Under the pieces are notes generated by a model. It searched no databases. It saw nothing but the letters and a program-made list of their open reading frames with translations, and had not been told where the DNA came from. From Vitrella brassicaformis CCMP3155 (Eukaryota > Protista > Chromerida): a DNA stretch of 64,000 nucleotides. How positions within the stretch are numbered: the first letter of the stretch is position 1; each line of letters starts with the position of its first letter. A program made the translations under genes and the position numbers. Shown here piece by piece: positions 549 to 49,108 of this stretch. The stretch spans positions 1 through 64,000 of the forward strand of contig CDMY01000448.1 of NCBI GenBank assembly GCA_001179505.1. The letters are read 5' to 3'.

Positions 549-2125
549 ATGGCGCATGTGTTGCCTCTGCAGGTGTGGCAGCGTCGAGTGCTGTCCAATC
601 TGGGCGTCCGTGATGCCATCCGAGTCAGATCTTCGTCACGCGCCAGCGGCACCTCGGCTGTCAACTGCACCCTCATTCTCGGCCGCATCGACACATTGCT
701 GATTCGCTATGGGCTCAGTGGGCTGATTGACGTCGACAGACATGGCGGGACGGCTGGGGCGGCTCCGCTGCCCGGCGGCCTCTCGCGCATCGACTACCTG
801 TGCCGCGTGCTGTATCTGCTGGAGCGTGGTGGCCGTCTGTGGGCCTGGCTGGGCGGCTTCCTCCGCTTGGCGGCCATCTATCGGCTGACGCCCGCTACGC
901 CTCTGGTGATATCGGCTGAGTGGGTGCAGCAGCACTGGCCCACCAGGGCCGCCTTGCGCCAGCTGCCGCTCGCACTGGCCATCTACAAAGCCATCGGCCA
1001 TCTGCTCAGCCACAGAGGCGACAGCCTGGCCCTGACCACAGACGAACAGACGAACGAGAATGACGAGGTCAGTCACATCAGAGGGGACATTCATGACTGA
1101 CGTCTGCTGTCGTCATACCGTTGCCATGCGTTTCTGTCTGCAGGATGGTGGGCCTGACGGGAGTGACGAGCAAGAGGAGGATCTGGCCGAGCCGGTGGAC
1201 AATGCTGGCGCTGAGGAGGTCGGTGGCGGCCACATCAAGACATGTGTGTGTTCACTGCACCCACACATGTGCCCCTTACTCAGGACGACGGGCAAGAGGG
1301 GCCCATGGCGTCTGACGATGGCCAGGTCAGCAACAGACATACTGATGTGGTGTGGTGCTTTGATGGACGGCTCGTGTGTGTGGTGCATGGTGTGGCGGTT
1401 TGCAGGACACCCTGATTGGCGATGGCGACGGCGAGGCGGCCGGTGGGGGGCAGTCGATGGAACCTGACGGCGACGTAGGCATTGACTGCACTGCCCAATA
1501 GGGAGGGGCACACGGGTACGGTGTCCGCTGATTGCGTGTTTGTGTGTGCGAGCAGGACCATAGTGACGAGAGTGACGACCACCACATCTATCCCCACAAG
1601 GTCGGCACTGTGCGGTTCCGCATTCTGCCGGCCGACGAGGCCCCGGGCAACCAGCCCTACGACACAGACGACCCGGCCATCGAGGAGGACGGCTGTCGGA
1701 TCCGCTACTCGTCATTCTCGGCCTTCATGACGGACAACCTCATGTGCTACTGGTCCGTGAACATCGGAGCGGGCGACAAGATCGTTCTGAAGGCGTCAGT
1801 CCCACACGCTGATGCCCGCTTTCGGTCCCTCATGGCCACAGAGGCCGTGGGCGACTGCATCGTGGAGGACATGCATGTTGAGGATGGACATGGGGGACGC
1901 ACCGTGGTGCTGTGTGGCCACCGGTCGAATGAGACCGTCGCTGCGCACCTGCGGCTTACGCGTTTTGGATACATACGTATCCACACGACGGAGGGGCGTG
2001 TGGGTGGCGGTGTGTCTGTGGATGAGTGCTATCCCATTACCGTCCGCCATGCCCGTGATGTGCTCAGACAAGTGAGACTAGAGAGGGATGTGGTAGACCA
2101 GGGCATGCGCATGGATGGCCAGTAG
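549..2125 (+). CDS. Lineage-specific multicopy family protein, copy 1 (~424 aa, 5 exons: 549-1067, 1144-1218, 1284-1325, 1406-1474, 1556-2125)
   Basis: MAHVLPLQVWQRRVLSNL... N-domain, acidic mini-exon linker, and HKVG...CGHRSNETVAAHL...YPITVRHAR C-domain. GT-AG introns give a continuous frame. Near-identical paralogues at 35532-37132 and 47584-49108. Confidence 0.85.
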
Positions 2126-2301
2126 CTAGCTCAGACCAGCCGGTGTTTCTGTGCAGACCGACTGCATGTGTGACACGACTCATTGGATTGCATGATATCC
2201 GCGAGTGTAGTGCTTGAATGCCATTGAGTCGACAGAGTCATGCGATTACAAAGTGAAACACGCACAGCCCAGGCAACAGTGCACAGCATTTCGAAGGTCA
2301 G

Positions 2302-4820
2302 CTAGCGGGGTGTGGTGAAGAGCCCCTTGAGCATCGGCGGCTTCTTCACGTTGGCTATATTGGTCAGACCGGGATGTACCCTCCCTGCACACATCCATCC
2401 ATCCATGCATCCATACTCAACAGCCCACTCTACTCACCTGCAGCAGCGACTGCTTGTTCCTCTTCCTGCGACACGTGCTGTGTGGTGGGTCCCGGGCTTT
2501 CGCTGCTGATTGAGCTGTCGACGGGGTCGCGTCGCATGGCCTCGTCCGTCTCGAAGTTGTAGTGGAATGGGATGCCGCGGATGTCATAGAAGGTGTGCCA
2601 GGCCGGCCCGCGCCACAGCAGCGTCACGTCGGCGTCGCGCCGGCTGCTGTCGAGCAGGGGGCCCTTCTTGCTGTAGGTGATGCGACGGGGCCTCAGGTCC
2701 AGGTGGGGCGGCAGCTCCTGCACAGAGACAGACAGACAGACAGAGAGAGACATGGATGCACCTCACTGTGTTGTAGGGGTCAAGTCATGTGTGTCATACC
2801 TACCTTCACGTGTATCATTGCGTAGCAACGATGGCAGAAGTTCTCTGCATGTGTGACACACACAGAAGAGCCTCCGTCAGGGACATCAGGCACGCGCACC
2901 TTCCTCTTATAAGTGAGTGTCTATGTGTTTCAACGATCGCCCGACTGACCAAAAGTATAAGTGCATTGGAGTTTGGCCGGGAGAGTGAGGCACCTCGAGC
3001 AGGGGATCAGCCGGACAGGCCGATGGTTTCGCCGATCCCCTGACGGACAGACAGACAGACAGACAGACAGAAATCATTCAGGTCCCCCAGTGGACCGTCG
3101 CTACCTTTGCCGTGTATCTTAGTGAAGCACGCCTCGCAGAAAGAGTCATTGCAGCCTTATCATCAATCACACACCCATGGGTGCAATCCCATCAATCAAT
3201 GTGCACAGTGCGGGTCATATGACTCACTGGTGCAGAATATGGTGGCGACTTTGCCTGTCGTCCCTGCCGCCACTGCATCCCCCTCAGCAGCTGGCTTCTC
3301 GAGCATCATGGGCCCGCCCGCTGCCGTGTTGTCCGCCGATGCATGGGGTGCGCACTCGACACACATCATCTGACCGCTAGCGAGGTCTGCGCTGGCCACA
3401 AAAAGGGGAGGAAAGGGGATGAGGGGTCCAGAGACATGAGGAAGGAGACACGTGCTGCTCTCATTCACGTGATGCGCTTACCGTCTATGTTGGGTTCCTC
3501 GGTCTTGCCCGCCAGGAGGTCCTGTCAATCAACCGAGGGAAGGAACCGAGTGTGCGAAGCTAGCACTGGTGAAATGAGCAAGCGGATATGTGATGAGCGT
3601 ACGTGTATCTCATCTGCCTTGTCCCGCTCGATGCTGCGGCCACAAGCACACACACAGACACACGGAAACGGTTATTGCCGTGCGGATGTGCGAGTGTCTC
3701 TCTGAGTGTCTGCCTCACTGACTCTTTCACTCACTCAATGGCCTCGAGCAGCTGCACGACGTCCTGCTCCTCCACCTGCTGATAACTGAGGCGTGGACAC
3801 AACACACGGTAAGCCAGCCAAGCCAACGATATGTGTCTCTCTGCTGTGTGTGTCATGCGCGCGGGCACCCCACTCATCCATCCGCTCGCTGGCTCACTGT
3901 CTGTATTGGTGTGCGAAGTGCTTCAGGTAGGTCTTGAGTGTCCGACACACATATGGCTCCTGAAGTGCACACAGACATCGGCATACACGCAGAAAGGAGG
4001 TCGGTGCGTCCGTCCGTTTATTTGTTCGCGTTGGCAAGTGACCCACCCCACCTGGACAAGGTCGATTGAGAGTATTTCGGCAAAGCTCAGCAGCCATTGC
4101 GGGGACAACTGTGCAGGACCACACACACAGTAGAAGAGGCCCTTACACGTACAGGCATCCATCCCATCAATGTGTGGCCACCAGTGGGTGCTGCAACGAG
4201 CTGATGGACATCGACTCGGCCTCAAAGCTGGTCGGTCCATCAATCGACACACATGCAGCAGTGGCAGTAAGTTAGTTAAGTCGTGCAGATCAGATCTCTA
4301 TGCACCGCTGACCTACCCACCTCCACAGCATTCGTGTGATGCGCAGCTTCAGGTGCTCCTCGTGGGTGGCGTGCCTGCAGTGCTCCAGCAGCGACTTGAA
4401 GTAGTCGAAGAAGGGATGCTTCCACGTCGTCTGGTTTGTCTCGTTGTTCAGGTAACACACCTATACACACACAGACTTACTTGTGGGTGTCTGTCTGTTT
4501 GTCTGTGGCTCTTGGTGGATGGGTGCCTCTGTTTGTTGGTTGGATGGCTTACGATGCTGCCCACTCCCTTGTATGAAGTCCATGGTGGGGGCAGCTCCAT
4601 GCTGGCGAAACTCTCAACCACCTGATCGGTCATGGTGTGGTGTGTGTCTCTGTCCCACGACTGACGACTGCCCGTTTGACTGACCCATTTGAATGGTGCG
4701 TCGGCCTCGTCCAGGTCGGCCTCTATGTACAGTGCCCACTCCTCGATCGTCGGGCGGTTGCCCAGACAACGCAGCACAGGCTGAGTGGACGCTGAATGAG
4801 TGAGTGAGTGAGGGGACACA

Positions 4821-4857
<37 letters not shown>

Positions 4858-5783
4858 GGGAGACAGACGGACGACGCTAAGTGCATACGGATGGTCCCCC
4901 TTTTCTTGCTTTGTTCCCTCGCCCTTTTTGAGTGTGTTTTGTGTGGTAGGGTCGGAGAGGCCCATCAGGTAGAAGGGGTCGCCATCCAGCTCGTCCAAAG
5001 CCTGCTCACAGACAGACAGACAGACAGAGACAGACACACACACAGGGAGACAGACACTGTGACACTCTGCTCACGGAGATGCCCACTCTTCGGCCATCTG
5101 CTTACACCCTCAGTGAGCAGCTTCTTCCTTTCCAGCAGCCGCAACGTCTTTGACCAAAGCTCGTCGACATTGCTCGTCCACCCCTAGAAAGCCACGCAAC
5201 ACCACAGCGAAAAAAACATTAACTGCGGTGTACGCTTTTTCTTCTTTGTGTCGTGCTGCCTTCGACTTCGATGATATTTTCCGGCGTCTCAAAAGCTGTG
5301 CGGAACTCAGGAGCCCCCTCACCTATATCCAACCAAACACAGGAGAGATGGACGCACGTGAGAGAGGGGGATACAAGATCGCATCCCCAGACCCGCTGCC
5401 GCGCGTGTGCTTCATGTATGGCCTCCTCACCAGGTCTGATCTCCATGTACACGTATGTCTTATCGACAGGGTAGGAGGACAGGAATCCCACAGGAATGAG
5501 CCCCTCCGTCATGCCAACACGAGCGGCATCCTCGCTGGGAAACTGAAATCGATACGCCGGATTCTCCGTCTGATGCGTGGAAGAAGGCACCGACGCACAA
5601 ACCAGCACCAAGCACAATGGCCCTCATCGCCCCACACTCCTGCAGTGGTTGTGCTGTGCTTACATCGTGTATGCGTCCGAACTGGACGACCTTGTGTCTG
5701 GGGCCTTTGCTTGGACTCGGTGACCGGCCGGCCGCCTTGGTTGAGGTGCCTGCTGCCTTCGAGGGACGTCCCTTGCGCAGCAT
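2302..5783 (-). CDS. Multi-exon WW-domain and tandem B-box-type zinc-finger protein with a CEP164-N-terminus-like WW module
   Basis: Exons encode EEWALYIEADLDEADAPFKW..LPPPWTSYKGVGSIVCYLNNETNQTTWKHPFFDYF (CEP164-like WW, ~4330-4790); CVEC...ATIFCTSCNDSFCEACFTKIHGKGDRRNH and CSRCLTLPAKLQCTYTFENFCHRCYAMIH (B-box-like, ~2800-3380); WHTFYDIRGIPFHYNFET (WW-like, ~2540-2610). ATG at 5783, TAG at 2302-2304. Confidence 0.7.
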
Positions 5784-5873
5784 ACCGTTCAACAGTTTCG
5801 CGCAAGACTGGGGGCGGTTGGGGGCGTCCCCGTCTCGAAGTGGATTGAATCCTCAGCAGGGCGGCAAGCGAAA

Positions 5874-7536
5874 ATGGCAACGCCGGAGTGCAGGTAAGAC
5901 ACCGGGACGAAAGAAGACAGTGGCTGTAAAGTGTGTGCCGGTTCTCTCAGGAAGTGTGGGATGGTGTTTGCGGGTGCCGCCGAGCTGTCGAACCATGACC
6001 AGAACTTCTGCGTCGATGCGCCTGGACGGAAAGAGGAAGCTGACACGCTCTCGCCAGAGGACCGAGAAAAGGCCTTCCAGCAGCTCAAGTGCGGACGAAA
6101 TTGTAACACACTCAGTCTGATCAAGCTTCATATCCCGTCTTGCATGGCAGGGCCTACATTGCCAGTAGGGGGCCACGGGATGACCCGAAGAGCAAGCCAA
6201 CGCTGGCAACCACGGTACAACAAAGGGCATCGGTCACGTTCAATTTGTGTGAGTGTTGTTTTAACTGCAGCCCTTGGAGGAGATTGGCAAGAGGTTCAAC
6301 TTGCTGCGGCCGCTAGTGCGGGACTCGGACGATGCCAACGACAGGCTCATGCAAGCAAGGTGTGGCCGACGGGTGGAAAACACGAAGAGAGGAGGCCGGA
6401 GGGGCCATTGTTGAGTGTGGCGCTTTGTGTGGACTTCAGGTCTCATGAGCTGGCGGCAAAGGTCGCGGAGGCGCGGAGTGAGCGCCAGGTGCTGGCAGAA
6501 GAGAATGCCAAGGTCAAGCTAGGTCAGACACAGCACACGACGCATGCAGCCCCAGATGACACACCCAACCATGACGCCCCTCCGCTTGTCTGTCCGTCTG
6601 AACGTGTCTGTGTCCAGTTGGACGAGGAGCTCAAGGCCACTGTGCAGCAGATGCGGCAAAAGAAGGTCGGAGGGCCGCAGGGATCATCCGCCACACACAT
6701 ACTTTGGTGTGGTTTGGGTGTATGGTGCACGGATCTCGATCCATCATGATAACAGAGAGAGGCGGTGGACGTGCAGATGGAAAAGGAGAAACTCGAGAAA
6801 GAGCTGCAGGCACGTGACACCTAACGACACATGAGCCAGCACACAAACGACGCCAACGGACGGATGGCTGGTTGAATCGATTTGTCTGTCTATGGGTGGT
6901 CAGCACTTGGACCAGGGCCGCCTCGCCGCGCTCACCGAAGAGGGGCGGCAGCAAGTCCAGGTGAGCAATTGGTTGAGAGAATACCATAGCGGAAACATCC
7001 ATCGATTGGCCGGTCCACTGCTGCCTTTCCTCCTTCCTGTCTGCCCCACACATACAGTCCCTGCAGCTAGAGCTGAGAAAGCTCAGAAGACAGGTGACAT
7101 CAAAGCAGAAACAGGAGACTACATACACGCCCATTCCCTCCCTCCCTCCCTCCCTCCCTCCCTCCCGGTGTGTGTTGTCAGGATGAGCGTCTGGCATCGC
7201 AGATCGAGGCCGCCAAGGACCAGATACTGCACAGGAGACAACAGTCAGTCATTCAGCCAGGCCAGGCAACACATCGATCGCATCTACCATACCAATGGGG
7301 TCCATCGATCCGTCCGTCCACCCATGGATGGATGGATGGATGGCTACATGGGTGCGTGGCTGTCTGCAGGTATGAGAAGGGCAAGGAGAGGGGGTCTCAG
7401 TCGGCGCGGCTGCCCCCCACCAACCCCTTCGCCGTCGAGCAGCTCCTCAGCCTCGCCAAGCGACAGGCGGTACGTATGTCTGTCTGTATGTGTGTCTGTG
7501 ATATGACACAGAGACGAGAGACGCCTACACCCGACA

Positions 7537-7569
<33 letters not shown>

Positions 7570-35531: not shown

Positions 35532-37132
35532 TCACTCGTCATCCATGCGCCTGCCCTGGTCTATGACCTCCCTCTCTAGTCTGACTTGTCTGAGCATACC
35601 ACGGGCATGGCGGACGGTAACGGGATAGCACTCATCCACAGACACACCACCACTCACACGCCCCTCCGTCGTGTAGATCTCTATGTGTCCACGCCAAACT
35701 ATGTGTGCACGCCAAACTAGCAGGTGCGCAGCGACGGTCTCATTGGGCCGGTGGCCACACAGCACCACGGTGCGTCCCGCATGTCTATACTCGTCATGCA
35801 TGTCCGCCACGATGCAGTCGCCGAAGGCCTCTGTGGCCATGAGGGACCCAAGGCGGGCATCAGTGTGTGGGACTGACGCCGTCAGGATCCTCCTCTTGCC
35901 CGCTGCTTCATGCCTGTTCCAGTAGCACATGAGGTTGTCCGTCATGAAGGCCGAGAATGACGAGTAGCGGTACCGACCGCCGTCCTCCTCGATGGCCGGG
36001 TCGTCTGTGTCGTAGGGCTGGTTGCCCGGGGCCGCATAGGCCGGCAGAATGCGGAAGCGCACATTGCCGACCTTGTGGGGATAGATGCGGTGGTGGTCGT
36101 CACTCTCGTCACTATGGTCCTGCTTGCACACACAAACACACAATCAGCGGACACCATACCCATGTGCCCCTCCCTATTGGGCAGTTCAGTCAATGCCTAC
36201 GTCGTCGTCAGGTTCCATCGGCTGCCCCCCACCGCCCGCCTCGCCGTCGCCATCGCCAATCAGGGCGTCCTGCAAACCGCCACACCATGCACCACACACA
36301 CGAGCCGTCCATCAAAGCACCACACCACATCAGTATGTCTGTTGCTGACCTGGCCACCGTCAGACGCCATGGGCCCCTCTTGGCCGTCGTCCTGAGTAAG
36401 GGGCACATGTGTGGGTGCAGTGAACACACTCATGTCTTGATGTGGCCGCCACCGACCTCCTCAGCGCCACCATTGTCCACCGGCTCGGCCAGATCATCCT
36501 CTTGCTCGCCACTCTCGTCAGGCCCACCATCCTGGAGACACAGACGCATGGCAACGGCATGACGACAGCACACGTCACTCAGGAATGTCCCCTCTGATGT
36601 GACTGACCTCGCCAGCGTCATTCTCGTTCGTCTGCTCGTATGTGGTGAGGGCCAGGCTGCCGCCCTCGTAGCTGAGCAGATGGCCGATGGTCTTGCAGAT
36701 GGCCAATGAGAGCGGCAGCTGGTGCAAGGCGGCCCTGGTGGGCCAGTGCTGCTGCACCCACTCAGCAGATATCACCAGCGGCATAGCGAGGGTCAGCCGA
36801 TAGATGGCCGCCACACGCAGGAAGCCGCCCAGCCAGGCCCACAGACGGCCACCACGCTCCAGCAGATACAGCACGCGGCACAGGTAGTCGATGCGCGAGA
36901 GGCCGCCGGGCAGCGGAGCCGCCCCAGCCGTCCCGCCATGTCTGTCGACGTCAATCAGCCCAGTGAGCTCATAGCGCCTCAGCAATGCGTCGATGCGCCG
37001 CAAGATGAAATCACAGCCGATGACGGAGGTGCCGCTGGTGTGTGACGAAGATCTGACTCGGATGGCATCACGGACGCCCAGATTGGACAGCACTCGACGC
37101 TGCCACACCTGCAGAGGCAACACATGCGCCAT
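35532..37132 (-). CDS. Lineage-specific multicopy family protein, copy 2 (5 exons, inverted relative to copies 1 and 3)
   Basis: ORFs 36575-37132 and 35532-36143 are highly similar to copy 1. The introns and three linker mini-exons are also conserved. Confidence 0.85.
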
Positions 37133-37214: not shown

Positions 37215-37915
37215 TCTTGAATCCACCATCTACTGTCGACATCATCATGTTGCGGCGCATCTCTCAGCGACTGATCTCTGAGCCGCAGCCATCGCCGGCA
37301 GTGCTGCGTGAGTGCGCTGATCAGCTGGTCAGGGCCCTCCCGAGTGAGAACCACGAGCAGGTCGACTTCTACTGATCCGTGTCGATGTTCTGCAACAAGT
37401 TCGCCGGCTATGCATTCACAGATCCGCCTTTCTGGCAGCAGCTGGGGGACGTACTCATCGGCGTACTCACACAGACGCAGCAGCAGCAGCGGCAGCAGCA
37501 GCGGCAGCAGCAGGAGGCCTCAGGCTCCTCATCGGCGGTGGAGATCCGATGGCTGGCGCTTATTCTCAACTCGTACGCCAGGGTGGACTTCCGNNNNNNN
37601 NNNNNNNNNNNNNNNNNNNNNNNNNNNNNNNNNNNNNNNNNNNNNNNNNNNNNNNNNNNNNNNNNNNNNNNNNNNNNNNNNNNNNNNNNNNNNNNNNNNN
37701 NNNNNNNNNNNNNNNNNNNNNNNNNNNNNNNNNNNNNNNNNNNNNNNNNNNNNNNNNNNNNNNNNNNNNNNNNNNNNNNNNNNNNNNNNNNNNNNNNNNN
37801 NNNNNNNNNNNNNNNNNNNNNNNNNNNNNNNNNNNNNNNNNNNNNNNNNNNNNNNNNNNNNNNNNNNNNNNNNNNNNNNNNNNNNNNNNNNNNCTGGTGA
37901 CGCACATCGACCGCC
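37215..37915 (+). pseudogene. Truncated duplicate of the helical-repeat/RAP-like gene at 38894-40833, with a premature stop and an assembly gap
   Basis: 37230-37593 is near-identical to ~38877-39240 but has TAC-TGA (37373-37375) in place of TAC-TGG. After the gap, 37894-37915 equals 40004-40025, then similarity ends. Confidence 0.75.
37594..37893. other. Assembly gap (300 N)
   Basis: Run of N. Confidence 1.
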
Positions 37916-38061: not shown

Positions 38062-38139
38062 CATCGCAAGCCATGCACCGCACCCCCCACACACATTTAT
38101 TTATTCACCCCTGCACAACTCTATTCTCTCTGTCTGTGT

Positions 38140-38812
38140 GTGTCTGTCGTGCGAAGGGCCGAGCCGAGCCTGAGCGTGTCTGTGCTGTGTGTGTTCTGTG
38201 TGTGTGTGTGTGCATCCCATAGGCCCACACACACACACACATCCATCCCCCCTGCACACACACACACTCTCTCTCTCTGTCTGTGTGCAATGATGCGAAG
38301 GCGAGGCCCGAAGGGCCGAGCCGAGCATGTCTGTCTGTCTGTCTGTCTGAGTCTGTGTGTGTTGTCTGTGTGTGTGTGCATCACACACAACACCCCACAC
38401 ACAGCCACTCACCCCTGCACGCACTGGTTGTCTCTCCCTCTCTCTCTGTGTCCATGGGCTTTTGGCCAACTTGGCGATGCCGTGGAAGGACGAGTATTGA
38501 CTGTATAGCTTATCTGCAAGAAGTTCTGAAAAGTGCCAACACCCACCGCCTCGCTATTCCCCCTTTCCACCAAGTTGCACCTCTCACCACTTCAACGCAC
38601 TCACCCCATCGATACCCCCCCTGCCGCATACCCACTTCTCACACACGCAAGGCCATCCGCTCAAACTCTCCACACAGACAGCCCATCACACCAACAACCA
38701 TTCCCCGGCCTCCCCGCCCCCCTGCAATGGGAGAAAGCCCCCAAAGCGAAAGTATTAGGGTTTGTTGGGGCGCAGCAGCTGGGGCGCAGGGTTTGCGAGC
38801 TTAGACGTGCAC
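38140..38812. repeat. Dispersed element, copy Y; its 5' part contains 2-3 imperfect ~150-bp tandem units (CGAAGGGCCGAGCCGAGC...TGTGTGCATC...CCCCTGCAC...)
   Basis: Colinear with 19390-20141; tandem units visible at ~38040-38455. Confidence 0.85.
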
Positions 38813-38893
38813 GCAAGAGAATGAGCAGCATAGACCTTGGCGAAGGATTGGCTTCTTGTCCTGAATAATACACCGTCTGCTGTCGACATCATC

Positions 38894-40833
38894 ATGCTGC
38901 GGCGCATCTCTCAGCGACTGATCTCTGAGCCGCAGCCATCGCCGGCAGTGCTGCGTGAGTGCGCTGATCAGCTGGTCAGGGCCCTCCCGAGTGAGAACCA
39001 CAAGCAGGTCGACTTCTACTGGTCCGTGTCGATGTTCTGCAACAAGTTCGCCGGCTATGCATTCACAGATCCGCCTTTCTGGCAGCAGCTGGGGGACGTA
39101 CTCATCGGCGTACTCACACAGACGCAGCAGCAGCAGCGGCAGCAGCATCATAAGCAGCAGGAGGCCTCAGGCTCCTCATCGGCGGTGGAGATCCGATGGC
39201 TGGCGCTTATTCTCAACTCGTACGCCAGGGTGGACTTCCGGCACGAGAGGCTGATGGAGGTGGCGGCCAGTGTGTTGCTCCAACGCACCGCCCCATCCTT
39301 CGAAGGCACCGACGTATCTCAGCTTTGCAATGCCTTCGCCCGTCTGTCGCCGCCCCTCACGTCGCCCCATGCACCCAAGTACCTGAGGCAGCTCTGCGAC
39401 GGCCTGGCTGTGGCCGCCATGCGGCACGTGGCGGAGCTATCTGCTCAGGGCATTGCCAACATCGTCAACGCCTACGCGCGGCTGGAGGCCTTCCACCATG
39501 ACCTCTTTGTAGCTCTCGAGACGGCCGCCATGGACAAGCTCGACTCGTTCGGGCCGCAGGAGATGGCCAACGCGCTCAACGGCTACGCCAAGTTTGCCGA
39601 CAGCCGGCCGGAGGTCAAATCGCCCCGACTCTTCGACGCCTTCGGTGACCGCATCGCCGCCCGTCTGCGGGAGTTCAAGCCGCCGGAGCTTGTGATGGTA
39701 GTCAATGCGTACGCCAAAGTGGGCTTCCACCGACGGCGGCTGTTCGACCGACTCGACGAGCGGCTGCCAGAGGTGGTCGGCCATCTCAACGGCCGTGAGC
39801 TGTCCATTCTTGCTAACGGATACGCTCGCTTCTGGCGGAGATGCGACGCCCTGTTCGACCAGATCAGCGTGCGGCTGCTCTCTGCTGACCACTCACAACA
39901 GGCCGATATCCTGCGGCCGTCTGTGTGCTCTGGCATGAATCTGGCGCTGCTGCTGCACTCGTACGGTCGGCTGGCGGTTCGGCATCAAGGGGTGATATCT
40001 GTGCTGGTGACGCACATCGACCGCCGGCTGTACGAGCTTGACAGCCGCAACCTGGCGCACGTGCTGGTGTCCCTGGCCAAGCTCGATTGGCGCTGCCCGG
40101 AGGCCATGAAGAGCCGACTTGTCGCGGCGGTAGAGGGGCAACTGGGCGTGTGCAAGAAGTCCCACCACCATCAGCCCCAGCAGCACCAGCAGCGTCAGGG
40201 TCACGAAGGGATGGTCGACTTGGGGATGGTGAGCGTCACCCATGCGTTGTTGCACCCCTACTACTATGACCCGGGGCTGGTGGCTGTGCTGCTCGAGGAG
40301 CTGCACCGCAGACGAGCCATGAGCGCCTCATTTGTCCACCAGGTGAGTGAGTATGTTGTGTGTCACACGCACGTATGAGTTTTGTCAGCCGCCCGTCCCA
40401 TACGTATGTGCTACGCGTGTGTGTGTGCGGGGGGCAGATGTACGTGTGTCTGTCCCTGGTCACCCACTCTCCCCCGAGCACAACCCCCGCTGCGTCGACT
40501 CTCTCGGCATTGACCAGCCTTCTCGACCGCGTGGAGGCCGCCCACCAGAGGAATCCCGATTGTTTCGCCCTGCGACCCTCCTCGCTCCAGGATGCCGTGC
40601 AAGAGGCCATCCCGAGGTGGTGTGGTGGCTTCGTGCAGGAGGGCATCGCCGGGCCATATGTGCTGGATTTGGTGGGTCCTCCGCTGAGTTTACTGGAGAG
40701 GGGCCTTGTCGAGCATTGCAGCACAGCAGAGGGGGACGGTGTGACAGGGTGGGAACAGAAGCGAGGGACGGAGAGGGGAGGAGGGGAGCTGCCACAGTGG
40801 GCGGCGGCGGAAGAGGGCCAAGCTGTCATGTGA
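38894..40833 (+). CDS. Helical-repeat (heptatricopeptide/FASTK-like) RNA-binding protein with a RAP-like C-terminus, predicted organellar
   Basis: Repeats ~36-40 aa apart: DVSQLCNAFARL, QGIANIVNAYARL, QEMANALNGYAKF, PELVMVVNAYAKV, RELSILANGYARF, NLALLLHSYGRL, RNLAHVLVSLAKL. Second exon SSLQDAV...EGIAGPYVLDLV is RAP-like. First in-frame ATG at 38894 (MLRRISQRL). Confidence 0.8.
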
Positions 40834-41073
40834 TGTGTGTACGTGTATATGTATGTATGCGTGGGTGCGGAGAGCGTAGAGCGCAGAGACAGACAGACAG
40901 ACAGGGGACTGAGGGAGGGAGGGAGGGACGTTTGTTGACTGACTGACGGTTATTTACTGTCAATATCATGTTGATGGATGGATGGATGTTCCCTGGATGT
41001 TGGTTGACCAAACGCGCATCGCATCATCAGGTTCCTGTCCCTCCGTCCAGGCACCTTGCCCCAATTCACCCAA

Positions 41074-41373
41074 NNNNNNNNNNNNNNNNNNNNNNNNNNN
41101 NNNNNNNNNNNNNNNNNNNNNNNNNNNNNNNNNNNNNNNNNNNNNNNNNNNNNNNNNNNNNNNNNNNNNNNNNNNNNNNNNNNNNNNNNNNNNNNNNNNN
41201 NNNNNNNNNNNNNNNNNNNNNNNNNNNNNNNNNNNNNNNNNNNNNNNNNNNNNNNNNNNNNNNNNNNNNNNNNNNNNNNNNNNNNNNNNNNNNNNNNNNN
41301 NNNNNNNNNNNNNNNNNNNNNNNNNNNNNNNNNNNNNNNNNNNNNNNNNNNNNNNNNNNNNNNNNNNNNNNNN
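41074..41373. other. Assembly gap (300 N)
   Basis: Run of N. Confidence 1.
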
Positions 41374-41460
41374 CCACCACTCACGCCCACCCATCCATCC
41401 CGCAGGCAGCACCCTCTATCATCCATCATCGATCAGCCAGCCAGCCAGCCAGCCAGTTAG

Positions 41461-43052
41461 TCACACACTATCGTCCCCCTCCCCGTCCCCCCTCTTGGCA
41501 GCGGCGGTGCTACGGCGACCCAGCAACCCTCCCGTCAGCCGACTCAACAGGCCCCCCTGGTGCATGGGGGGCGACTCGTCACCATTCTCGGGGATGCGGA
41601 ACCTCGGCAAGTTCATGGCCGCACCGCCACCGCCACCAGCGGCAGCAGCAGCTGCAGGAGGGGATTCTTGCTCTGGGGTCTTTTCCTGCTCCTGCTCCTG
41701 CTCCTCGGTGGCTTCTGGCTGCTGCAGCTCGTGTGGCTGGGTGCTTGCGATGGCCTTGAATCGTGTGCGTATGATGCAGACGAAGGCGCCGAACTCGATC
41801 TGCTTGGCGTTGAGGGCCGTCACCAGGGCGGGCAGGTCAGCGATCGGGGGGTCGCACAGCAACACTGAGTGAGCAAGGGGCAGGGAGTCCACACACAGAC
41901 AGACAGACAGACAGACACACAGACAGGCAGACAACAAGTGGGTCCATGTGATGTGCGTGGCGTGTGCGTACCTTTGTATTCGGTCTCGTCGTCTTTGAGG
42001 TAGAGTTCAAAGGCGTACTCCTTGGCGTCATCGGCCGGGTGCAGGTTCGTGAAGATCACGCGCACGTGGCCCTTGCCCACGGAATCTGTGGGTGCACGTC
42101 ACATCACATGAGTGTATACCGCCAGGCACACTCGTCCGTCCGTCCATCCATCGGTCTATTGTCACCCACCTACCCACTCACCTGCAACTCGGGAGAGTTT
42201 GAGTCCGAGTTTGCGCTGGAAGCTGGATATCAGCACCTCGTACTCGGCGTGACGCTCAACCATCTTGGCCTTCTCGCGCTCGTACACTGACACAACACAA
42301 CACAACACACCACACCACACCACACATGTCCCAGCGCTTCTCTCCCTGCACGCCACGCCTGCACGTCTGCCTATCTATCTGTCTCTCTCCTCGTATCGTG
42401 GTACCTACTTACCTTTCTTTGCGCGTTCTACTTTGGCTTTCATGTGCCCCGTTTCGGTCTCGGCGTTGCGCACGTCCTCGGGCAGACGCTCCAACTTGGA
42501 CAACACATCCTAAACACACAGATAGATAGACCAGCACGCCGCCATGTGTGTGGCTGAAGGCATCTGTTGCTGGCTGTGAGCATGTTATGTTGCGGACGCT
42601 AAGCTGCTGCTGGAAGTCGGCCTCCTTCTGCTGGAAGAGGCCCTCCTCTGATAACACACACCATCAGCAACAACGTTGGCACATGGCAACACGTCTGTCT
42701 GTCTGTCTGTCTGTCTGGTGCGGTGGTCATCTCTTGGTCTTTTACTGGCTTGGTACTCCTGCAGCTTGGTCCGGTAGGCAAACACCTCCTTCTGGATCTC
42801 ACCCAACACACCTGCGCCGCGCCATGGACCCGACCCACATCCGCCCGCCACGCCATCCATCCCACCCCACTTCGATACCTTACCTTGTTTGGTGGTCTTT
42901 GAGTCCTGGCATCTCTGCTTGCCGACCTCGGCTATCTTGAGGCACTGGTCGCGGACCTTCTGTGCGACCTCGACCTCCTCCTGCAACGCATCCTTCAGCT
43001 GCTGCTGGCTTGCCAACAGCTGACGGATGAACGCTCCGTCTTGCGGTGCCAT
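41461..43052 (-). CDS. SPC25: Kinetochore Ndc80-complex subunit Spc25-like protein
   Basis: N-terminal coiled coil, then SFQRKLGLKLSRVA..GHVRVIFTNLHPADDAKEYAFELYL...CDPPIADLPALVTALNAKQIEFGAFVCIIRTRFK, matching the Spc25 RWD-like head. Confidence 0.8.
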
Positions 43053-43252
43053 TTCCCACCCCAATCTCTGTTTGTAAACTTCGTGGGCGAACTTGAAAGA
43101 CCGTTATTTCGTGGGCAGCGCAGCAGGCCATGGCCCCATTTGGATAGCGCTCGCCCATCATGATACTTAAACCCCATTTGGATAGCGTCTTTGTCGCCTG
43201 AAGCATTGATTCAGCCACTTGATTCAGCCCCAACTTGAAGGCTTGCAGAACG
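43053..43252. promoter_or_regulatory. Putative bidirectional promoter carrying paired direct-repeat motifs
   Basis: CCCCATTTGGATAGCG at 43134 and 43172; TTGATTCAGCC at 43206 and 43219; TTCGTGGGC at 43080 and 43108; AACTTGAA at 43090 and 43232; located between two divergent ATGs. Confidence 0.5.
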
Positions 43253-45389
43253 ATGATGGCCGACTCATTGGGGGCTGACGCCAACATGGACACGAAGGCT
43301 CAGCAGGTGGTCAGACAGACAGACAGACAGACAGACAGAGACCAAGACGCCACTCATGTGTCCTGTCTGTCTGTCTGTCTGTCTGTCTGTCGGGGTCAGG
43401 AGGATAAGCCAGGGCCTTCATCAGGCCCCAGTTCAGAGGTAGGCACAAATATGCATGGGAACTTGACAGGCCACCCACATGTGCAGGGCGGTGTATCTGC
43501 GTCTCTGCTCCAGGAGTGTCGTCACGATGTGCTCGACGGACGGCTGGAGTCGTTGAGAAAGTAGGCAGACATAGCGAAACGATAGAGACATGAATATGCA
43601 TCATATATGGTGTCTGTCTGCCTGTACCTTCTCCCGCAGGTCTTTGCATGAGAAGCGCAGCCGCAGTCTCAAGATATTCGAGCGCCTGTCCACTGTGGCC
43701 GACCGCATCCAGCACGTCACCTTGTGCTCCACGGCACCGGCAGCTGTGGTGATGCCCCCGCCACCCCAAGAGGAGAAAGCAGCCCCGGGCAGCAGGCAGA
43801 CCACCATAGACCGGCTGGTGGGCGAAGGGAGCCCCTTGAGTGCGTCGTCTAACGAAGAGTGAGTTACCGGAGGGATGTATTGTCTTTCATTCCTTCCATT
43901 GCCATTTCTTCTTCTTGCTGTCGGTCGGTCGGTTGGCTTCTTGCAGCTTCGCCCCGGAGAACAAAGCATCGACCAAGCCAGTCATCCCGCCGCTCAACAT
44001 GTCACGCCTGGCAGACAGCAGAGAGCCGGATCCCCCTCTGGGAGACGCGGAACGGGAAGGCCTGCTGCAGAAACAACACGAAGAGGCGGAATGCGCGCAT
44101 GCTCGGCAGGGTGACGAGGATGCCGGCGTTGATGAGAGGCGAGAGCAAGGCGGTGACGTCTCTGTCCCCTGTGGCATCCCGAGTCCATTCTTCCAGACCA
44201 AGTTGGAAGAGGAGCTGTGGACGGAGGTGTTGCGGCTGCGGCGGGAGAGCGAGGCAGACCAGGACACATGGAACACCAAGATGGCACAGGTGAGGCAGCA
44301 TGAGACACGACCACATTGGACACATTGGACAAATGGAGGATTCGACTTTTTCTCCTCTTTGCTGGGTGCAGTTTCATGAGCAGCTTTGTCGGCTGGAGGC
44401 CGACCAGGCCGAGAAACAGAGCATCATTGACCAACTAACACACACCATCCAAAATGTCCAGGTAAGGACTAGGATCATGCCTGCACCGCAAACAAGACGT
44501 CCCTCTATGTGTTGGCCGACAGGCGATTCTGGAGTCGCTCTTTGGCGAGCTGAGAGACATCCGACTGACCATTCGCGGCCTGCGCAGAAGACCTTCCTCT
44601 CCGAGAAGGGGAGGCTCGTCTCGTGTTTCTTCCGCCAACCCACGGCAGGGTCGGGCGTTGACACATTCGCCAGCCGTCAAAGAGCTGCCAGCTGTCGTGC
44701 CACGCGTCAAGGTGCCCTCAGTACCGCCATTGAAGCTGTCAGACTCCTTGAAGAAGGACAAGACAATCGACAAGGATGAGGACAGCAATGTCCTTCTTCA
44801 AGGAGCGGCTAAGACGGAAGTCACAATGTCTCCTCAGTACAGCAAGGCTGCAGCCCCTCCCGCCCTCTTTGCAGCGCCCCTCGCTCCCCCAGAGTCGCCT
44901 GTACTGTGTGTCCGCACCCCTCCGACATTCAGATCGTACAATGAGACGACAGGCCGTTCTCCGCCGCCTCTCTGGCTGATCCAGCCGCCTACCACAGCTG
45001 GCACTATGGTGCCTGAGGGTGTGGAGACGATGAGAAGCGTCCCAGATGAGGGAGTCAGGAAGACAGTCAAGGGGGGTGTGGTCCCCAAAAAGGGGCTCTT
45101 ACAAGATCGGCCGCCCTCCGCGAGGAGGGAGAAACGCCCACCACTGGCGCGATCGGTGTCTCTGCCGCCTCCGCATTATAATAGGCCCTTTCGACCGCGA
45201 TTTGTGCTGCCTCCTCCTCCGCGTCGGCCGCCGCCGCCCTTGCCCCCTGCTTACGTGGTGCGGCCGATGCCTGTGCCAGTGGTGTATATGCGGCCGGTGC
45301 CGCCTGTGGCGTATGTGTATGCGGGGGTGGACTCACGTGCAGCGGCGGGGTGTCTGGGTGCATGCAGACCGAAGCACAGAGGACGATAG
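43253..45389 (+). CDS. Hypothetical coiled-coil protein with a Pro-rich C-terminus (multi-exon)
   Basis: Spliced exons MMADSLGADANMDTKAQQ, SLHEKRSRSLKIFERL, TKLEEELWTEVLRLRRE, FHEQLCRLEADQAEKQ; last exon is ORF 44658-45389. Confidence 0.65.
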
Positions 45390-45537
45390 ACTGACAGACA
45401 GATCAATCACCCAATCAGTGTATGGATGGTATGTACACATCAGAGCGGTGCGGTCCCGGACCGGAACACACACACGGACATGCAATGCACACGCGTGAAT
45501 GTCTTGACGGACGTGGTGTCTCAAGCAAAGGGTTCAA

Positions 45538-47387
45538 TCACTGAGCCCCGCCCTCCTTCCTCTTTGCTCTATTGCCCTCACTGAGTGCCCGATAGAAGGA
45601 ATCAGCGTCCATGACTGGAGCGAGAGGGACAGACGACCACAAATGGCGCCGCTTGTTGATCGTGTGCCCGATGGTAGGCGTAGCCCCGAAGAGCCTTGCC
45701 AATGCGGGCTGATCAGTGTACTCGTCCTTGAAGGCTGTCATGGGCCCCTCTTTGCTCTTCTTCATGCACCGCACGGCCGCCACCACCTGCTTGAAGTGCT
45801 CGCGGCTGTGTCTGTCACACTTGTCGAGCCACCTTTGCACCAGCCCGTGATGAGCCTGGGCCACCACATCCACAAACGTGACCTGCGACGCAGAAGAAAA
45901 AGGCACGCAGCTGGGAGAGCCATGATTCTGTTGGGTGTGTGTGACCTGTGATGGTGGTCTGGGTATCGCCCCCGCTTCGAAAGTGTCGTCGATTTGCTTT
46001 TCGTAGGACGTGACAAAGCGGCGATCCGGCGGATAGCCGACACCAACGTCCCACGGAACGCTTTGCTTCTGAAAGGAGGAGACACATACACGAAGCCCTG
46101 ACGTGAATCACCCATGAGCCGTGGTGTGTATACCCCTTCGAGCCACCGACCCACCCATCCCACAGACCATAGCGACAGGCGCCAGCTTCCTGTATATCTT
46201 CTCGAACCTGTCATTGTTAGCAAACGCTGCGCCAACCACAGAGAGCGAGAGAGAGAGAGACAGACAGGCACAAGCATTCATCCCCATGTCATGATGGCAC
46301 AGATACACGGACAGGCAGCCGCCCGCCCACTTACCCCGTTTATGGAATTTGAAGTGCGCTCTGCTCATCGACACCCACATGTTGCCCGCAAACGAGTCTG
46401 GTGGCGTCTCGCTCATACAGTCAAATGTCCTGGCATCGCTGGTCGACTCGCTACTCTCCGCCTCTGTGGGCGCGTGTTGCGACGAGAGGAAGTGTCTCGG
46501 CGGGTAGTGGTGGTTAAGCCACGCATTAAGCGTGTTGCTGTACTGAGAAGACGTTGTGATTTCCGTCTCGGCAGCACCAGAGGAGGGAGCTCCTTTCCTC
46601 TTTGACTTTGGTCGCCGGTGACTCCGGAGCTGCAGGAAAGCAAAACAAGGCACTTGTGCATCTATGTCTTTGTGAGGTGCTCAGCTGGCGTCTGGTTGTT
46701 ACCTTCTTATCGAGAAACAGCCGGACGGGCGGAACAGCATACGAGTCTTCGCTTCTGGCCTGCCGTCCTGGCCTTCTCTCGTCAGGCAGAGAGCGGGCAC
46801 CGATGGACGGCAGGTGGCCCTTCTCTTGGTGCAGGCTTGCTGGTGAGCTGTGGGCAGGGACGGCCGCCTGCCGCTGCACTGTCATACCGGCGTGGGGAGG
46901 AGGGAATGTCTTGGTGCGCCTGTGGAGGGAGGGGGTGCTCCTGTCATCACAAAGGAGAATTGTGTCTTTTGGGGCGGTTTGTCCTCCTCACTCACTCACT
47001 CACCCACTCATTGACTCACTTTGTCTGCGGCGGCGCCTTCGTGAGCGTTTTTGTGAGCGCGTTGTCCTTCTTGGGGCTGCCGGGCACAGACGCTGCTTCT
47101 GCGCGTGTCTCAGCCTGCTCCTCCCCCCTCTGTATGGCGCCGTGTACGGTGAGCAGGGAGTCGAGCATGCCCAGGAAACGCCGCTGCTCCAACTCGCTCC
47201 GCCATTTCTGCAAGAGAGAGGACCGCACTGACACTGACTCATCCGCCAAACATGAATGGGTGTACATGCATTGCTTCGTCATGACGGTGCGTACGTGCCA
47301 CTCCAGAAGTGAGGGCAGCTCTTCCTTGAACAGAGTTGTCACGAACGACTCGCGGCAAGACTTGATTGACTCTCGCTCGGCGGCCAT
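45538..47387 (-). CDS. Hypothetical multi-exon protein with several short T/S-x-(Y/F) motifs
   Basis: Exons MAAERESIKSCRESFVTTLF, KWRSELEQRRFLGML, TTSSQYSNTLNAW..VSMSRAHFKF, RRFVTSYEKQIDDTF, TAFKDEYTD...KEGGAQ*; the introns are GT-AG. Confidence 0.6.
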
Positions 47388-47583
47388 TTTCTTCTCAGCG
47401 AGCTCAGCTCCCCCCAGCGGCCCCCGCATGCATGCCATTGCAGACGTCTTTTCCGTCTCTGAAATATTCACTGGATGAGCTTTTTTCGGCGATTTCTTGC
47501 CGCTCCTTCGAAAACTGGTGGTGCTTCGGCCCTCGGCTCGCAAAAAGCCGGTTTTCCGGAAGAATCTCCCCCCGTCTGCAAAA

Positions 47584-49108
47584 ATGGCGCTTGTGTTGCC
47601 TCACGAGGTCTGGCGAGACCAGGTGGTGTCCAATCTCGGCGTCTGCGACGTCAGCAGGGTCAGATCCTCGTCACGCCCCAGCGGCACCTCCGTCATCGGC
47701 TGTGATTTCATCTTGCGGCGCATCGACGCATTGCTGAGGCGCTATGGGCTGAGTGGGCTGATTGACGTCGATAGACATGGCGGGGCGGCTGGGGCGGCTC
47801 CGCTGCCCGGCGGCCTCTCGCGCATCGACTACCTGTGCCCGCGTGCTGTATCTGCTGGAGCGTGGTGGCCGTCGGTGGGCGTGGCTGGGCGGCTTCCTCC
47901 GCTTGGCGGCCATCTATCGGCTGACCCCCACGATGCCTCTGGTGATATCGGCTGAGTGGGTGCAGCAGCACTGGCCCATCAGGGCCGCCCTGCACCAGCT
48001 GCAGCTCTCATTGGCCGTCTACAAGACCATCGGCCATCTGCTCAGCTACCAGGGCGACAGCCTGGCCCTGACCACAGACGAGCAGACTGGCGAGAATGGC
48101 GAGGTCAGTCACATCAGACGGGACATTCACGAGTGACGTGTGCTGTCGTCATGCCGTTGCCATACGTCTGTGTCTGCAGGATGGTGGGCCTGACGAGAGC
48201 AGTGGCGAGAATGAGGACCGCCAGGAGGGCGAGGTGGCGGAGCCGATAGAGCAGGATGGTGACGAGCAGGTGAGCGACACGTGCTGCACTCCTGACGCAC
48301 ACAGACGTGTGGATGCCACGGTATCGACCTGTTGTAGGATGATTTGATGGAGAGTGTCCCCGACCAAGGGCAGCACGAGCCTCCCCTGCCTCCCTGCCCC
48401 TCTGCCTCCGAATACGACACCTGGCACTGGTGCCGCAGCGGGGCTCCCCCCTCACAAGAAGGCGATGACGAGAGTGACGAGAGTGATGAGAGTTACGAGA
48501 GTGACGACAGTGACGACCACCACAACTATCCCCACAAGGTCGGCGATGTGCGGTTCTGCATTCTGCCGACCGATGAGGCCCCGGGCAACCAGCCCTACGA
48601 CACAGACGACCCGGCCGTTGAGGAGGACGGTGTTTTCCGCTACTCGTCATCCTCGGCCTTCATGACGGACAACCTCATGTGCTACTGGTCCGGTCGCGAA
48701 GGAGCCGAGGATGAGGCAGCGGGCGACCAGGAGATCCTGATGGCGTCAGTCCCACGCAATGATGCCCGTCTTCGGTCCCTCATGGCCACAGAGGCCTTCG
48801 GCGACTGCATCGTGGCGGACACGCATGACGAGGATGGGGGGGATCTGCCTTTGGGACGCACCGTGGTGCTGTGTGGCCACCGGTCGAATGAGACCGTCGC
48901 TGCGCACCTGCGAGTTGCGCGTTGGAGCACACACATTGACATAGAGATCTTCACGACAGAGGGGTGTGTGGGTGGCGGTGTGTCTGTGGATGAGTGCTAT
49001 CCCATTACCGTCCGCCATGCCCGTGATGTGCTCAGACGAGTCAGACTAGAGAGGGAGGTGGTAGACCAGGGCAGGCGCATGGATGACGACGACGACGACG
49101 ACGAGTAG
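47584..49108 (+). pseudogene. Lineage-specific multicopy family, copy 3, with a +1 frameshift in exon 1 (pseudogene or assembly error) and a different linker-exon set
   Basis: TGCCCGCG at 47836-47843 versus TGCCGCG in copies 1 and 2 splits exon 1 between ORFs 47497-47955 and 47762-48136. The C-domain exon ends at 49108. Confidence 0.75.

What the first reader, a model, noticed from the sequence alone, without database searches (positions are those of the whole stretch)
549..49108. Three dispersed copies of an unknown gene family show patchwork (mosaic) sequence exchange
Seen: copy 2 (minus strand) is identical to copy 1 for the first 91 nt of CDS, then identical to copy 3 for 69 nt (36970-37038 = 47678-47746) where copy 1 differs strongly (TSVIGCDFILRRIDALLRRY versus TSAVNCTLILGRIDTLLIRY). 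The C-domains alternate invariant blocks (FMTDNLMCYW, SLMATEA-GDCIV, RTVVLCGHR-NETVAAHL) with hypervariable blocks. Introns are conserved, yet I see no shared flanking sequence beyond a few nt upstream of the ATG or after the stop. Inference: an actively diversifying family shuffled by ectopic gene conversion or recombination, as in immune, effector or antigen repertoires, and spread as intron-containing DNA cassettes. Its function is unrecognised.
Basis: partly seen in the sequence, partly recalled or inferred. Interest (0 to 1): 0.78.

Follow-up and report, generated by a model that had tools for sequence, protein, structure and literature searches.

The report
Gene-converted F-box-like paralogues in Vitrella
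Three nearby genes in the alga Vitrella brassicaformis (one of them broken) belong to a very large, species-restricted family of probable ubiquitin-ligase adaptor proteins, and they really have swapped short stretches of sequence, which is a familiar way for such families to evolve.

Summary
Copy 2 equals copy 1 for CDS nt 1-91, where copy 3 differs at 22 sites. It then equals copy 3 for CDS nt 95-163, where copy 1 differs at 19.

The window is Vitrella brassicaformis CCMP3155. The three copies have two more close paralogues on other contigs. All five belong to a family of at least 150 loci that was found only in Vitrella.

- **Exchange:** recombination tests are significant (PHI p=0.0002). 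One gene pair differs by 5.6% in exon 1 but 30.9% in exon 5. Synonymous divergence is as patchy as non-synonymous divergence. Ectopic gene conversion is therefore well supported.
- **Assembly:** both gaps lie outside all copies.
- **Boundaries:** homology stops at the ATG and the stop codon in all five copies. I read this as conversion confined to the gene body, not as mobile cassettes. Copy 1's upstream flank is a young copia-type retrotransposon.
- **Broken copies:** copy 3 carries a +1 frameshift and the C276 copy carries three frame-breaking deletions.
- **Selection:** C-domain dN/dS is 0.8-1.4 and not significantly above 1, so diversifying selection is not shown.
- **Function:** the N-terminus is F-box-like by motif and by the top structural matches (Cdc4, FBXO31, beta-TrCP). 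It is below Pfam thresholds. The C-domain has no clear known fold.

An earlier first-reader note of this scan describes an F-box-like family with a hypervariable loop elsewhere in this genome; I did not test whether it is the same family.

The parts
549..2125 (+). Copy 1, intact. Exons 549-1067, 1144-1218, 1284-1325, 1406-1474, 1556-2125. Introns 76, 65, 80 and 81 nt.
   Evidence: Alignment and segment table. The public model P0086 has the same internal exons.
35532..37132 (-). Copy 2, intact; this is the mosaic copy. Exons 36608-37132, 36457-36531, 36350-36391, 36201-36269, 35532-36119.
   Evidence: for coordinates. The public protein P0068 (432 aa) matches this five-exon model.
36970..37038 (-). 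69-nt tract in copy 2 identical to copy 3 (47678-47746) and nearly identical to the C334 copy. Copy 1 differs at 19 positions.
37042..37132 (-). First 91 nt of copy 2's CDS, identical to copy 1. Copy 3 differs at 22 positions. Two substitutions private to copy 2 (CDS 92 and 94, window 37041 and 37039) sit exactly at the junction.
47584..49108 (+). Copy 3, frameshifted. Exon 1 47584-48103, exon 2 48180-48269, last exon 48338-49108. Its middle region differs from copies 1 and 2.
47836..47838 (+). CCC run where the other copies have CC. This +1 frameshift in copy 3's exon 1 leads to a stop at 47953-47955. The public model P0087 avoids it with an extra intron that removes the most conserved part of the family.
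1..534 (+). 3' end of a copia-type LTR retrotransposon: Pol C-terminus at 1-195 and an LTR at about 365-534. It ends 14 nt upstream of copy 1's ATG.
   Evidence: There are 31 other copies in the genome, many 97-100% identical.
37220..37593 (+). Stretch between copy 2 and the first gap. It is a ~97-98% duplicate of 38867-39240 (part of the neighbouring gene) and carries a stop codon that the other copy lacks.
   Evidence: (D6).

Best explanation
The three genes are members of a five-copy subfamily: three in this window, one on contig C276 and one on C334. The subfamily sits inside a very large family of at least 150 loci, found only in Vitrella brassicaformis. Family proteins have an F-box-like N-terminus, a helical middle domain, an acidic disordered linker and an alpha/beta C-terminal domain of no recognised fold. 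In this subfamily the linker is broken by four short introns. The patchwork arose by repeated non-allelic (ectopic) gene conversion between these dispersed paralogues, which lie in both orientations. Short tracts of tens to hundreds of nt were copied from one paralogue, intact or broken, into another. Tracts need homology, so exchange is confined to the gene body. This keeps exons and the embedded introns alike while the older flanks have diverged beyond recognition. Shown here: the mosaic, its statistical support, the family's size and restriction to Vitrella, and the broken state of two copies. Inferred: the proteins act as substrate receptors of SCF-type (Skp1-cullin) ubiquitin ligases, with the variable loops of the C-domain contacting the targets. 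Not shown: that the shuffling is adaptive.
For:
- **Conflicting splits:** among the five copies, ten different two-versus-three splits occur and they cluster along the gene.
- **PHI test:** p=0.0002 for the whole gene and about 0.001 for exon 1 alone.
- **One pair, two histories:** copy 3 and the C334 copy differ by 5.6% in exon 1 but 30.9% in exon 5 (p=2e-28; dS 0.06 versus 0.67).
- **Synonymous sites follow the patches:** dS is 0.54 in the first 60 codons of copy 1 versus copy 3, and 0.13 in the rest of exon 1. Selection on amino acids alone cannot explain this.
- **Introns closer than exons:** copies 1 and 2 differ by 4.3% in the introns and 11.4% in exon 5 (p=4e-4).
- **Tract geometry:** copy 2 is inverted relative to copies 1 and 3, and tracts as short as 69 nt are flanked by sequence of the other type. 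This fits non-crossover conversion, not crossing-over.
- **Family-wide discordance:** some protein pairs have a middle domain 93-100% identical with a C-domain at 50-57%, and others show the reverse.
- **Against an assembly chimera:** two bases private to copy 2 lie between the two tracts. The genome was assembled with Velvet at k=75, so any 75-mer that contains them spans both tracts.
- **Family size and range:**. A profile search of 1.84 billion representatives gave 189 hits. Of the 20 I looked up, 19 are Vitrella proteins or cluster at 90% identity with one; one (P0186) is an unnamed JGI/IMG sequence.
- **F-box-like N-terminus:** conserved motif LPxD/E-V/L-W...L...D/E-A...R. In the structural search of the N-domain model, nine of the top 29 rows are F-box proteins aligned at their F-box: Cdc4 Z 5.1, FBXO31 4.7, beta-TrCP 4.5 and 4.1, Fbs2 4.2, SLY1 4.1, FBXW8, FBXO3 and Fbw7.
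- **Supporting associations:** UniRef names two distant members F-box proteins, and one member carries a BTB domain instead. Skp1 genes are present in the genome.
Against:
- **Exon 5 is ambiguous:** the three possible topologies are supported 8:8:7 with no spatial clustering (PHI not significant). There, fine-scale conversion cannot be told from repeated substitution at hypervariable sites.
- **F-box evidence is weak by sequence:** Pfam gives no hit for the window's copies and only sub-threshold hits in a few members (E 0.0037-0.034). hhalign against five bona fide F-box-like domains of this genome gives P=0.02 only. The structural Z scores (5.1 at most) are in the range the tool calls common.
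- **No expression evidence:** none was found for these five copies.
- **Selection and decay:** dN/dS near 1 in the C-domain and two broken copies fit a decaying subfamily as well as a diversifying one.
Confidence: 0.72

Rival explanations
1. The subfamily is in neutral birth-and-death decay. Gene conversion happens only because the copies are similar, has no adaptive role, and the variable blocks are simply unconstrained loops.
For: C-domain dN/dS is 0.8-1.4 and never significantly above 1, in both secondary-structure elements and coil. Copy 3 is frameshifted and the C276 copy has deletions of 2, 97 and 1 nt. No transcripts for these five copies were seen among the sources listed. Copy 1's promoter region is displaced by a retrotransposon.
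Against: Copies 1 and 2 and the C334 copy keep full open frames and all splice sites. Exon 1 has dN/dS 0.4-0.6. Differences in exon 5 are strongly clustered between invariant blocks, whereas they are Poisson-distributed in the introns. That pattern means constraint still acts on parts of the protein.
Confidence: 0.35
2. The mosaic copy is an artefact of short-read assembly, gap filling or iterative base correction among 90%-identical paralogues.
For: The genome is a 2015 Illumina-only assembly (Velvet, SSPACE, GapFiller, IMAGE, ICORN). Copy 2 lies near a contig end and next to a near-duplicate of the neighbouring gene. The contig starts inside a repeat.
Against: Two bases private to copy 2 lie between the two tracts, so any 75-mer or 100-nt read that carries them spans both. 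The same two tract types also recombine differently in the C276 and C334 copies on other contigs. Discordance is family-wide. REAPR checking was applied by the authors.
Confidence: 0.07
3. There was no exchange. A single tree holds, with bursts of local substitution (hypermutation or diversifying selection) in short blocks.
For: For the two 5' blocks alone only three of the four possible combinations occur, so a tree with copy 2 as an intermediate could fit those two blocks. Exon 5 incompatibilities are not spatially clustered.
Against: Across the gene ten conflicting splits occur in clusters and PHI gives p=0.0002. Blocks differ as much at synonymous sites. Exon 1 and exon 5 give tenfold different dS for the same pair.
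Confidence: 0.04
4. The gene body itself is a mobile cassette that is copied exactly from ATG to stop, introns included, to new sites.
For: In all five copies homology begins within about 6 nt of the ATG and ends within 0-8 nt of the stop. No flank similarity exists.
Against: There are no terminal repeats, target-site duplications or transposase-like partner at the ends. The ends coincide with the limits of selection and of possible heteroduplex. Divergence between copies is very uneven along the gene, which a simple copy-and-paste would not give. Copy 1's upstream break is explained by a retrotransposon insertion.
Confidence: 0.04

Closest known systems
Lineage-specific expansions of F-box adaptor genes in nematodes and plants (FTH/FBA2, FBA, Kelch classes), evolving by birth-and-death with fast-changing substrate-binding domains. 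Thomas 2006 (PMC1524861) as cited and summarised in PMC3984280.
   Same: Hundreds of copies confined to one lineage. [quoted passage not shown] A lineage-specific C-terminal domain that varies most. Many pseudogenes. Clusters plus dispersed copies.
   Different: The C-terminal domain here matches no Pfam family or solved fold. The F-box is below Pfam thresholds. Positive selection was not demonstrated here. The host is a chromerid alga, and no description of this family turned up in the papers searched.
Gene conversion between the F-box paralogues FBXO6 and FBXO44 in primates (PMC3984280).
   Same: Interparalogue conversion tracts that cover the F-box and part of the adjoining domain.
   Different: There, a single old event between tandem neighbours. 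Here, several short tracts among five dispersed copies in both orientations and on three contigs, with broken copies taking part.
S-locus F-box (SLF) genes of Petunia and relatives, where genetic exchange between paralogues shapes recognition specificity
   Same: F-box receptor genes whose repertoire is reshaped by exchange of short segments.
   Different: SLF genes are linked in one locus and have a known target (S-RNases). No target or phenotype is known here.
Pseudogene-templated conversion repertoires such as chicken immunoglobulin V genes and trypanosome VSG mosaics (from my own knowledge).
   Same: Broken copies coexist with intact ones and share tracts with them.
   Different: No expression site, no programmed mechanism and no surface protein. 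Evolutionary-time conversion is enough to explain the data.

Membership tests
F-box proteins (SCF substrate receptors) | Sequence match to the F-box profile (Pfam PF00646 or PF12937) above the gathering score | tested here: not met
   No hit at E<=1 for the window's exon-1 products. Two of 43 N-domains hit PF12937 at best E=0.034. Distant members reach E 0.0037-0.025, all below cut-off. hhalign against five in-genome F-box-like domains aligns LP to LP in register but gives only P=0.02.
F-box proteins (SCF substrate receptors) | Three-helix F-box fold at the N-terminus followed by a helical linker, as in Skp1-bound structures | tested here: inconclusive
   N-domain model has pLDDT 82. Top structural match is Cdc4 residues 270-362 (Z 5.1, 84 aligned, rmsd 4.0). 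Eight more F-box proteins are among the top 29 rows, each aligned at its F-box. The Z values are low, so the enrichment is the argument, not any single score.
F-box proteins (SCF substrate receptors) | Binding to Skp1 | not testable with these tools
   Skp1 genes are present in the genome (three matches over the PF01466 cut-off). Binding needs an experiment.
Gene families shaped by ectopic (interparalogue) gene conversion | Phylogenetically incompatible sites that cluster along the sequence | tested here: met
   PHI p=0.0002 for the whole gene with five copies and about 0.001 for exon 1. Split map. Exon 5 alone is not significant.
Gene families shaped by ectopic (interparalogue) gene conversion | Segments of one gene pair with very different divergence, at synonymous sites too | tested here: met
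   Copy 3 versus the C334 copy: 5.6% in exon 1 against 30.9% in exon 5 (p=2e-28), dS 0.06 against 0.67. Copy 1 versus copy 3: dS 0.54 in codons 1-60 against 0.13 in the rest of exon 1.
Gene families shaped by ectopic (interparalogue) gene conversion | Mosaic confirmed in independent sequence data | not testable with these tools
Metagenome scans gave nothing.
Diversifying immune, antigen or effector repertoires | dN/dS above 1 in the recognition domain | tested here: inconclusive
   Exon 5 pairwise dN/dS is 0.79-1.40. One-sided Fisher P is 0.16 or higher in every partition.
Diversifying immune, antigen or effector repertoires | Secreted or surface-exposed product (signal peptide, membrane anchor) | not tested
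   No predictor was run. By direct reading the N-terminus is the polar F-box-like motif, and the model shows no long hydrophobic helix.

The most novel reading that the evidence does not exclude
Vitrella uses this family as an intracellular recognition repertoire. Intact and broken paralogues serve as a donor library, and conversion into expressed F-box-like receptor genes diversifies the loops that pick targets, for example viral or bacterial proteins, for ubiquitin-dependent destruction. This would be an immune-like system built on a new substrate-binding fold in a photosynthetic relative of apicomplexans.
Probability: 0.08. Interest if true: 0.8.

Novelty: new member of a known kind. Interest (0 to 1): 0.4.

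Why it matters
On these counts roughly one gene in a hundred in Vitrella may belong to this unnamed family, yet the genome paper and the other papers searched do not mention it. If the proteins are ubiquitin-ligase adaptors, this closest free-living relative of apicomplexan parasites has built a large, fast-changing target-recognition set of its own, with a binding domain of unknown fold. The window also gives a clean, well-bounded example of gene conversion between dispersed paralogues. In it, introns are better preserved than exons, and public gene models hide a frameshift and a retrotransposon fusion. That is useful for anyone re-annotating the genome.

Tried and rejected
- **Pfam scans** of exon products and of full-length relatives found nothing usable.
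- **PDB by sequence**, with the family profile and the N-domain profile, gave no hit even at E 10.
- **Foldseek against PDB**, for the full model and the N-domain model, gave nothing below E 0.2.
- **VIA-align wide search of the full model** returned only generic sheet-plus-helix matches to residues 304-432 (Z 7.0 at most, which the tool calls the usual background), so no fold is assigned to the C-domain.
- **ESM Atlas** gave scores of 0.81 at most, leads only. Those leads were 'F-box' and a cluster in which 20% of members carry PP2.
- **hhalign** of the N-domain against five bona fide F-box-like domains of the same genome gave the right register but only P=0.02.
- **dN/dS split by secondary structure** showed no partition significantly above 1.
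- **PHI on exon 5 alone** was not significant.
- **Flank homology among the five copies** turned up only microsatellites.
- **Search by sequence in the scan's earlier findings** was blank.
- **Spliced models:** Exon pieces were searched by reference, and the only full-length spliced sequences used were the public proteins returned by the tools (P0068, P0085-P0087).
Full report
**What is there.** The window is contig C448 of Vitrella brassicaformis CCMP3155. The organism is named by the sources of the matching proteins. The genome size and scaffold number, 72.7 Mb in 1064 scaffolds, agree with the genome paper. Repeat finding and alignment show three homologous genes at 549-2125 (+), 35532-37132 (-) and 47584-49108 (+).

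Copies 1 and 2 have five exons. A 173-175-codon first exon is followed by three mini-exons of 75, 42 and 69 nt, which encode an acidic linker, and then a 189-195-codon last exon. The four introns are 65-81 nt long with GT-AG ends. The public protein for copy 2 (P0068) has exactly this structure.

Exon products were searched by reference, and the full-length sequences used were the public proteins that the tools returned.

**The observation.**
- Copy 2 equals copy 1 for CDS nt 1-91, where copy 3 differs at 22 sites.
- Copy 2 equals copy 3 for CDS nt 95-163 (36970-37038 = 47678-47746), where copy 1 differs at 19 sites.
- Between the two tracts lie two substitutions found only in copy 2.

The invariant and variable blocks are also real. 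Variable sites are over-dispersed in exons 1 and 5 (p=0.0002) but randomly spread in the intron and mini-exon region. In the model the variable blocks fall mostly in loops and hairpins between strands, often with indels.

The two assembly gaps lie outside all copies. Copies 1 and 2 share one gap-free stretch.

**More copies.** A DNA search of the whole genome finds just two further close copies. One is at C276:51887-53345 and one at C334:95917-97076. After these, identity drops to about 70%.

The C276 copy has frame-breaking deletions of 2, 97 and 1 nt. Copy 3 has an extra C at 47838 that leads to a premature stop. The public model of copy 3 (P0087) hides this with an extra intron that removes the best-conserved part of the protein.

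So three of the five close copies are intact.

**Exchange between copies.**
- Among the five copies, ten different conflicting splits occur and they cluster along the gene.
- A PHI test with permutation gives p=0.0002 for the whole gene and about 0.001 for exon 1.
- The strongest single result concerns copy 3 and the C334 copy. They differ by 5.6% in exon 1 and 30.9% in exon 5 (p=2e-28), with dS 0.06 against 0.67.
- Synonymous divergence is as patchy as non-synonymous divergence. Between copies 1 and 3, dS is 0.54 in the first 60 codons and 0.13 in the rest of exon 1. The blocks therefore have different ancestry and are not local selection.
- Introns of copies 1 and 2 differ by 4.3%, less than exon 1 (8.7%) and exon 5 (11.4%; p=4e-4).
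- Copy 2 is inverted relative to the others, and tracts as short as 69 nt are embedded in sequence of the other type. This points to non-crossover gene conversion.

In exon 5 the three possible groupings of four copies are supported 8:8:7 without clustering. There I cannot tell very fine conversion from repeated change at hypervariable sites.

Across the wider family, domains of the same protein pair often disagree strongly. Some pairs have a middle domain 93-100% identical with a C-domain at 50-57%, and others show the reverse. Module exchange is therefore general in this family.

**Artefact?** The genome was assembled from Illumina reads with Velvet at k=75 and then scaffolded, gap-filled and base-corrected. 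Copy 2's private bases lie between the two tracts, so any 75-mer that contains them spans discriminating sites of both types. That makes a graph chimera unlikely.

I leave about 7% for an artefact.

**The sharp ends of homology.** In all five copies similarity starts within about 6 nt of the ATG and ends within 0-8 nt of the stop. Flanks share only microsatellites.

For copy 1 the reason upstream is plain. Window 1-534 is the 3' end of a copia-type LTR retrotransposon with many 97-100% identical copies, and it ends 14 nt before the ATG. The public model P0086 even fuses the Pol tail to the gene.

For the rest, the simplest reading is old dispersed duplicates. The dS of 0.65 retained in the C334 copy's exon 5 shows their age. 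Their gene bodies, with the short introns inside them, are kept alike by conversion, which cannot extend into non-homologous flanks.

I found no terminal repeats or other marks of a mobile cassette.

**What the protein is.** Six-frame searches with either end of the protein find at least 150 loci, with up to about 350 first-look candidates. Many lie in clusters on contigs C240, C350, C55 and C377, and most are single-exon genes of 350-500 codons.

A word search and a full HMMER profile search of 1.84 billion representatives find only this family, with 189 clusters. Of the 20 distant hits I looked up, 19 are Vitrella proteins or cluster at 90% identity with one, and one (P0186) is an unnamed JGI/IMG sequence. 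A few environmental sequences are 81-84% identical to the nearest genome copy.

Pfam, the PDB sequence search and Foldseek give nothing.

AlphaFold2 with a family alignment gives a confident model (pLDDT 81, pTM 0.77) in which the linker is disordered. The C-terminal part has only background-level structural matches, Z 7.0 at most.

The N-terminus carries a conserved motif, LPxD/E-V/L-W...L...D/E-A...R. When it is folded alone, its best structural matches are F-box proteins aligned at their F-box and linker helices. These are Cdc4 (Z 5.1), FBXO31, beta-TrCP, Fbs2, SLY1, FBXW8, FBXO3 and Fbw7, making nine of the top 29 rows.

Sequence support is weak. Pfam hits are sub-threshold and hhalign gives P=0.02.

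UniRef names two distant members F-box proteins, and one member carries a BTB domain, the equivalent adaptor module for cullin-3. Skp1 is present in the genome.

I therefore call the family F-box-like. I put about 60% on a role as substrate receptor of SCF-type ubiquitin ligases, with the variable C-domain loops as the likely contact surface. This last step is inference.

**Is it diversifying?** C-domain dN/dS among the four closest copies is 0.8-1.4, against 0.4-0.6 in exon 1, and is never significantly above 1.

Clustered change between invariant blocks shows that constraint persists. But adaptive diversification is not shown, and two broken copies fit birth-and-death turnover.

**Comparison with what is known.** Large lineage-specific F-box families with fast-changing C-terminal domains, pseudogenes and occasional gene conversion are well described in nematodes, plants and mammals (PMC3984280 and the work it cites).

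This is a new member of that kind, with an unrecognised binding domain, in a chromerid. The genome paper has no occurrence of 'F-box' or 'gene conversion', and the one Vitrella-plus-F-box paper that I opened does not describe this family.

An earlier first-reader note of this scan (s1-221831) describes six paralogues of an F-box-like family with a hypervariable loop on another piece of this genome. It may be the same family, but I did not test that.

**Verdict.** Gene conversion is supported. The cassette reading and the immune-like reading are not supported by present evidence. Interest is moderate.

Noticed in passing
window 1-534: 3' end of a copia-type LTR retrotransposon: Pol C-terminus at 1-195 and an LTR of about 170 nt at 365-534. 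There are 31 other copies or solo LTRs in the genome, many 97-100% identical, so the element was active recently. The contig starts inside it. The public gene model P0086 splices the Pol tail onto copy 1.
   Followed up: partly
window 37220-37593 and 38867-39240: A 374-nt stretch running up to the first assembly gap is a ~97-98% duplicate of part of the next gene 1.6 kb away. It differs by a TGG-to-TGA stop and by a CAG-repeat variant. It is either a real partial duplication or a doubtful scaffold join.
   Followed up: partly
window 47836-47838 and 47875-48004: The public protein for copy 3 (P0087) reads on in the shifted frame after the extra C and then skips about 130 nt as an intron, which deletes the family's most conserved segment. 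This looks like an annotation artefact over a pseudogene.
   Followed up: yes
window 1068-1555; L017:706-2019, L021:1501-2931: The acidic linker is split by four short introns only in this subfamily. In other members the same position holds an uninterrupted D/E/G-rich coding stretch. This raises the possibility that the introns arose within linker sequence.
   Followed up: no
proteins P0177, P0030, P0083, P0186, P0189, P0190, P0193, P0150: The family's core domain is annotated in fusion with BTB_2 plus TLDc, CBM_25, HMG box plus SAP, a cyclin C-terminal domain, ankyrin repeats or ubiquitin. Some of these may be merged neighbouring genes.
   Followed up: partly
window 37039-37041: The only two bases private to copy 2 in the 5' region sit exactly at the junction of the two conversion tracts and create a short CACACAC run. 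This may be a scar of the exchange.
   Followed up: no
whole window, e.g. 3036-3094, 43304-43362, 60360-60430: (GACA)n/(TGTC)n and (CA)n/(GA)n microsatellites are very frequent and account for nearly all other 'repeats' in the window.
   Followed up: no
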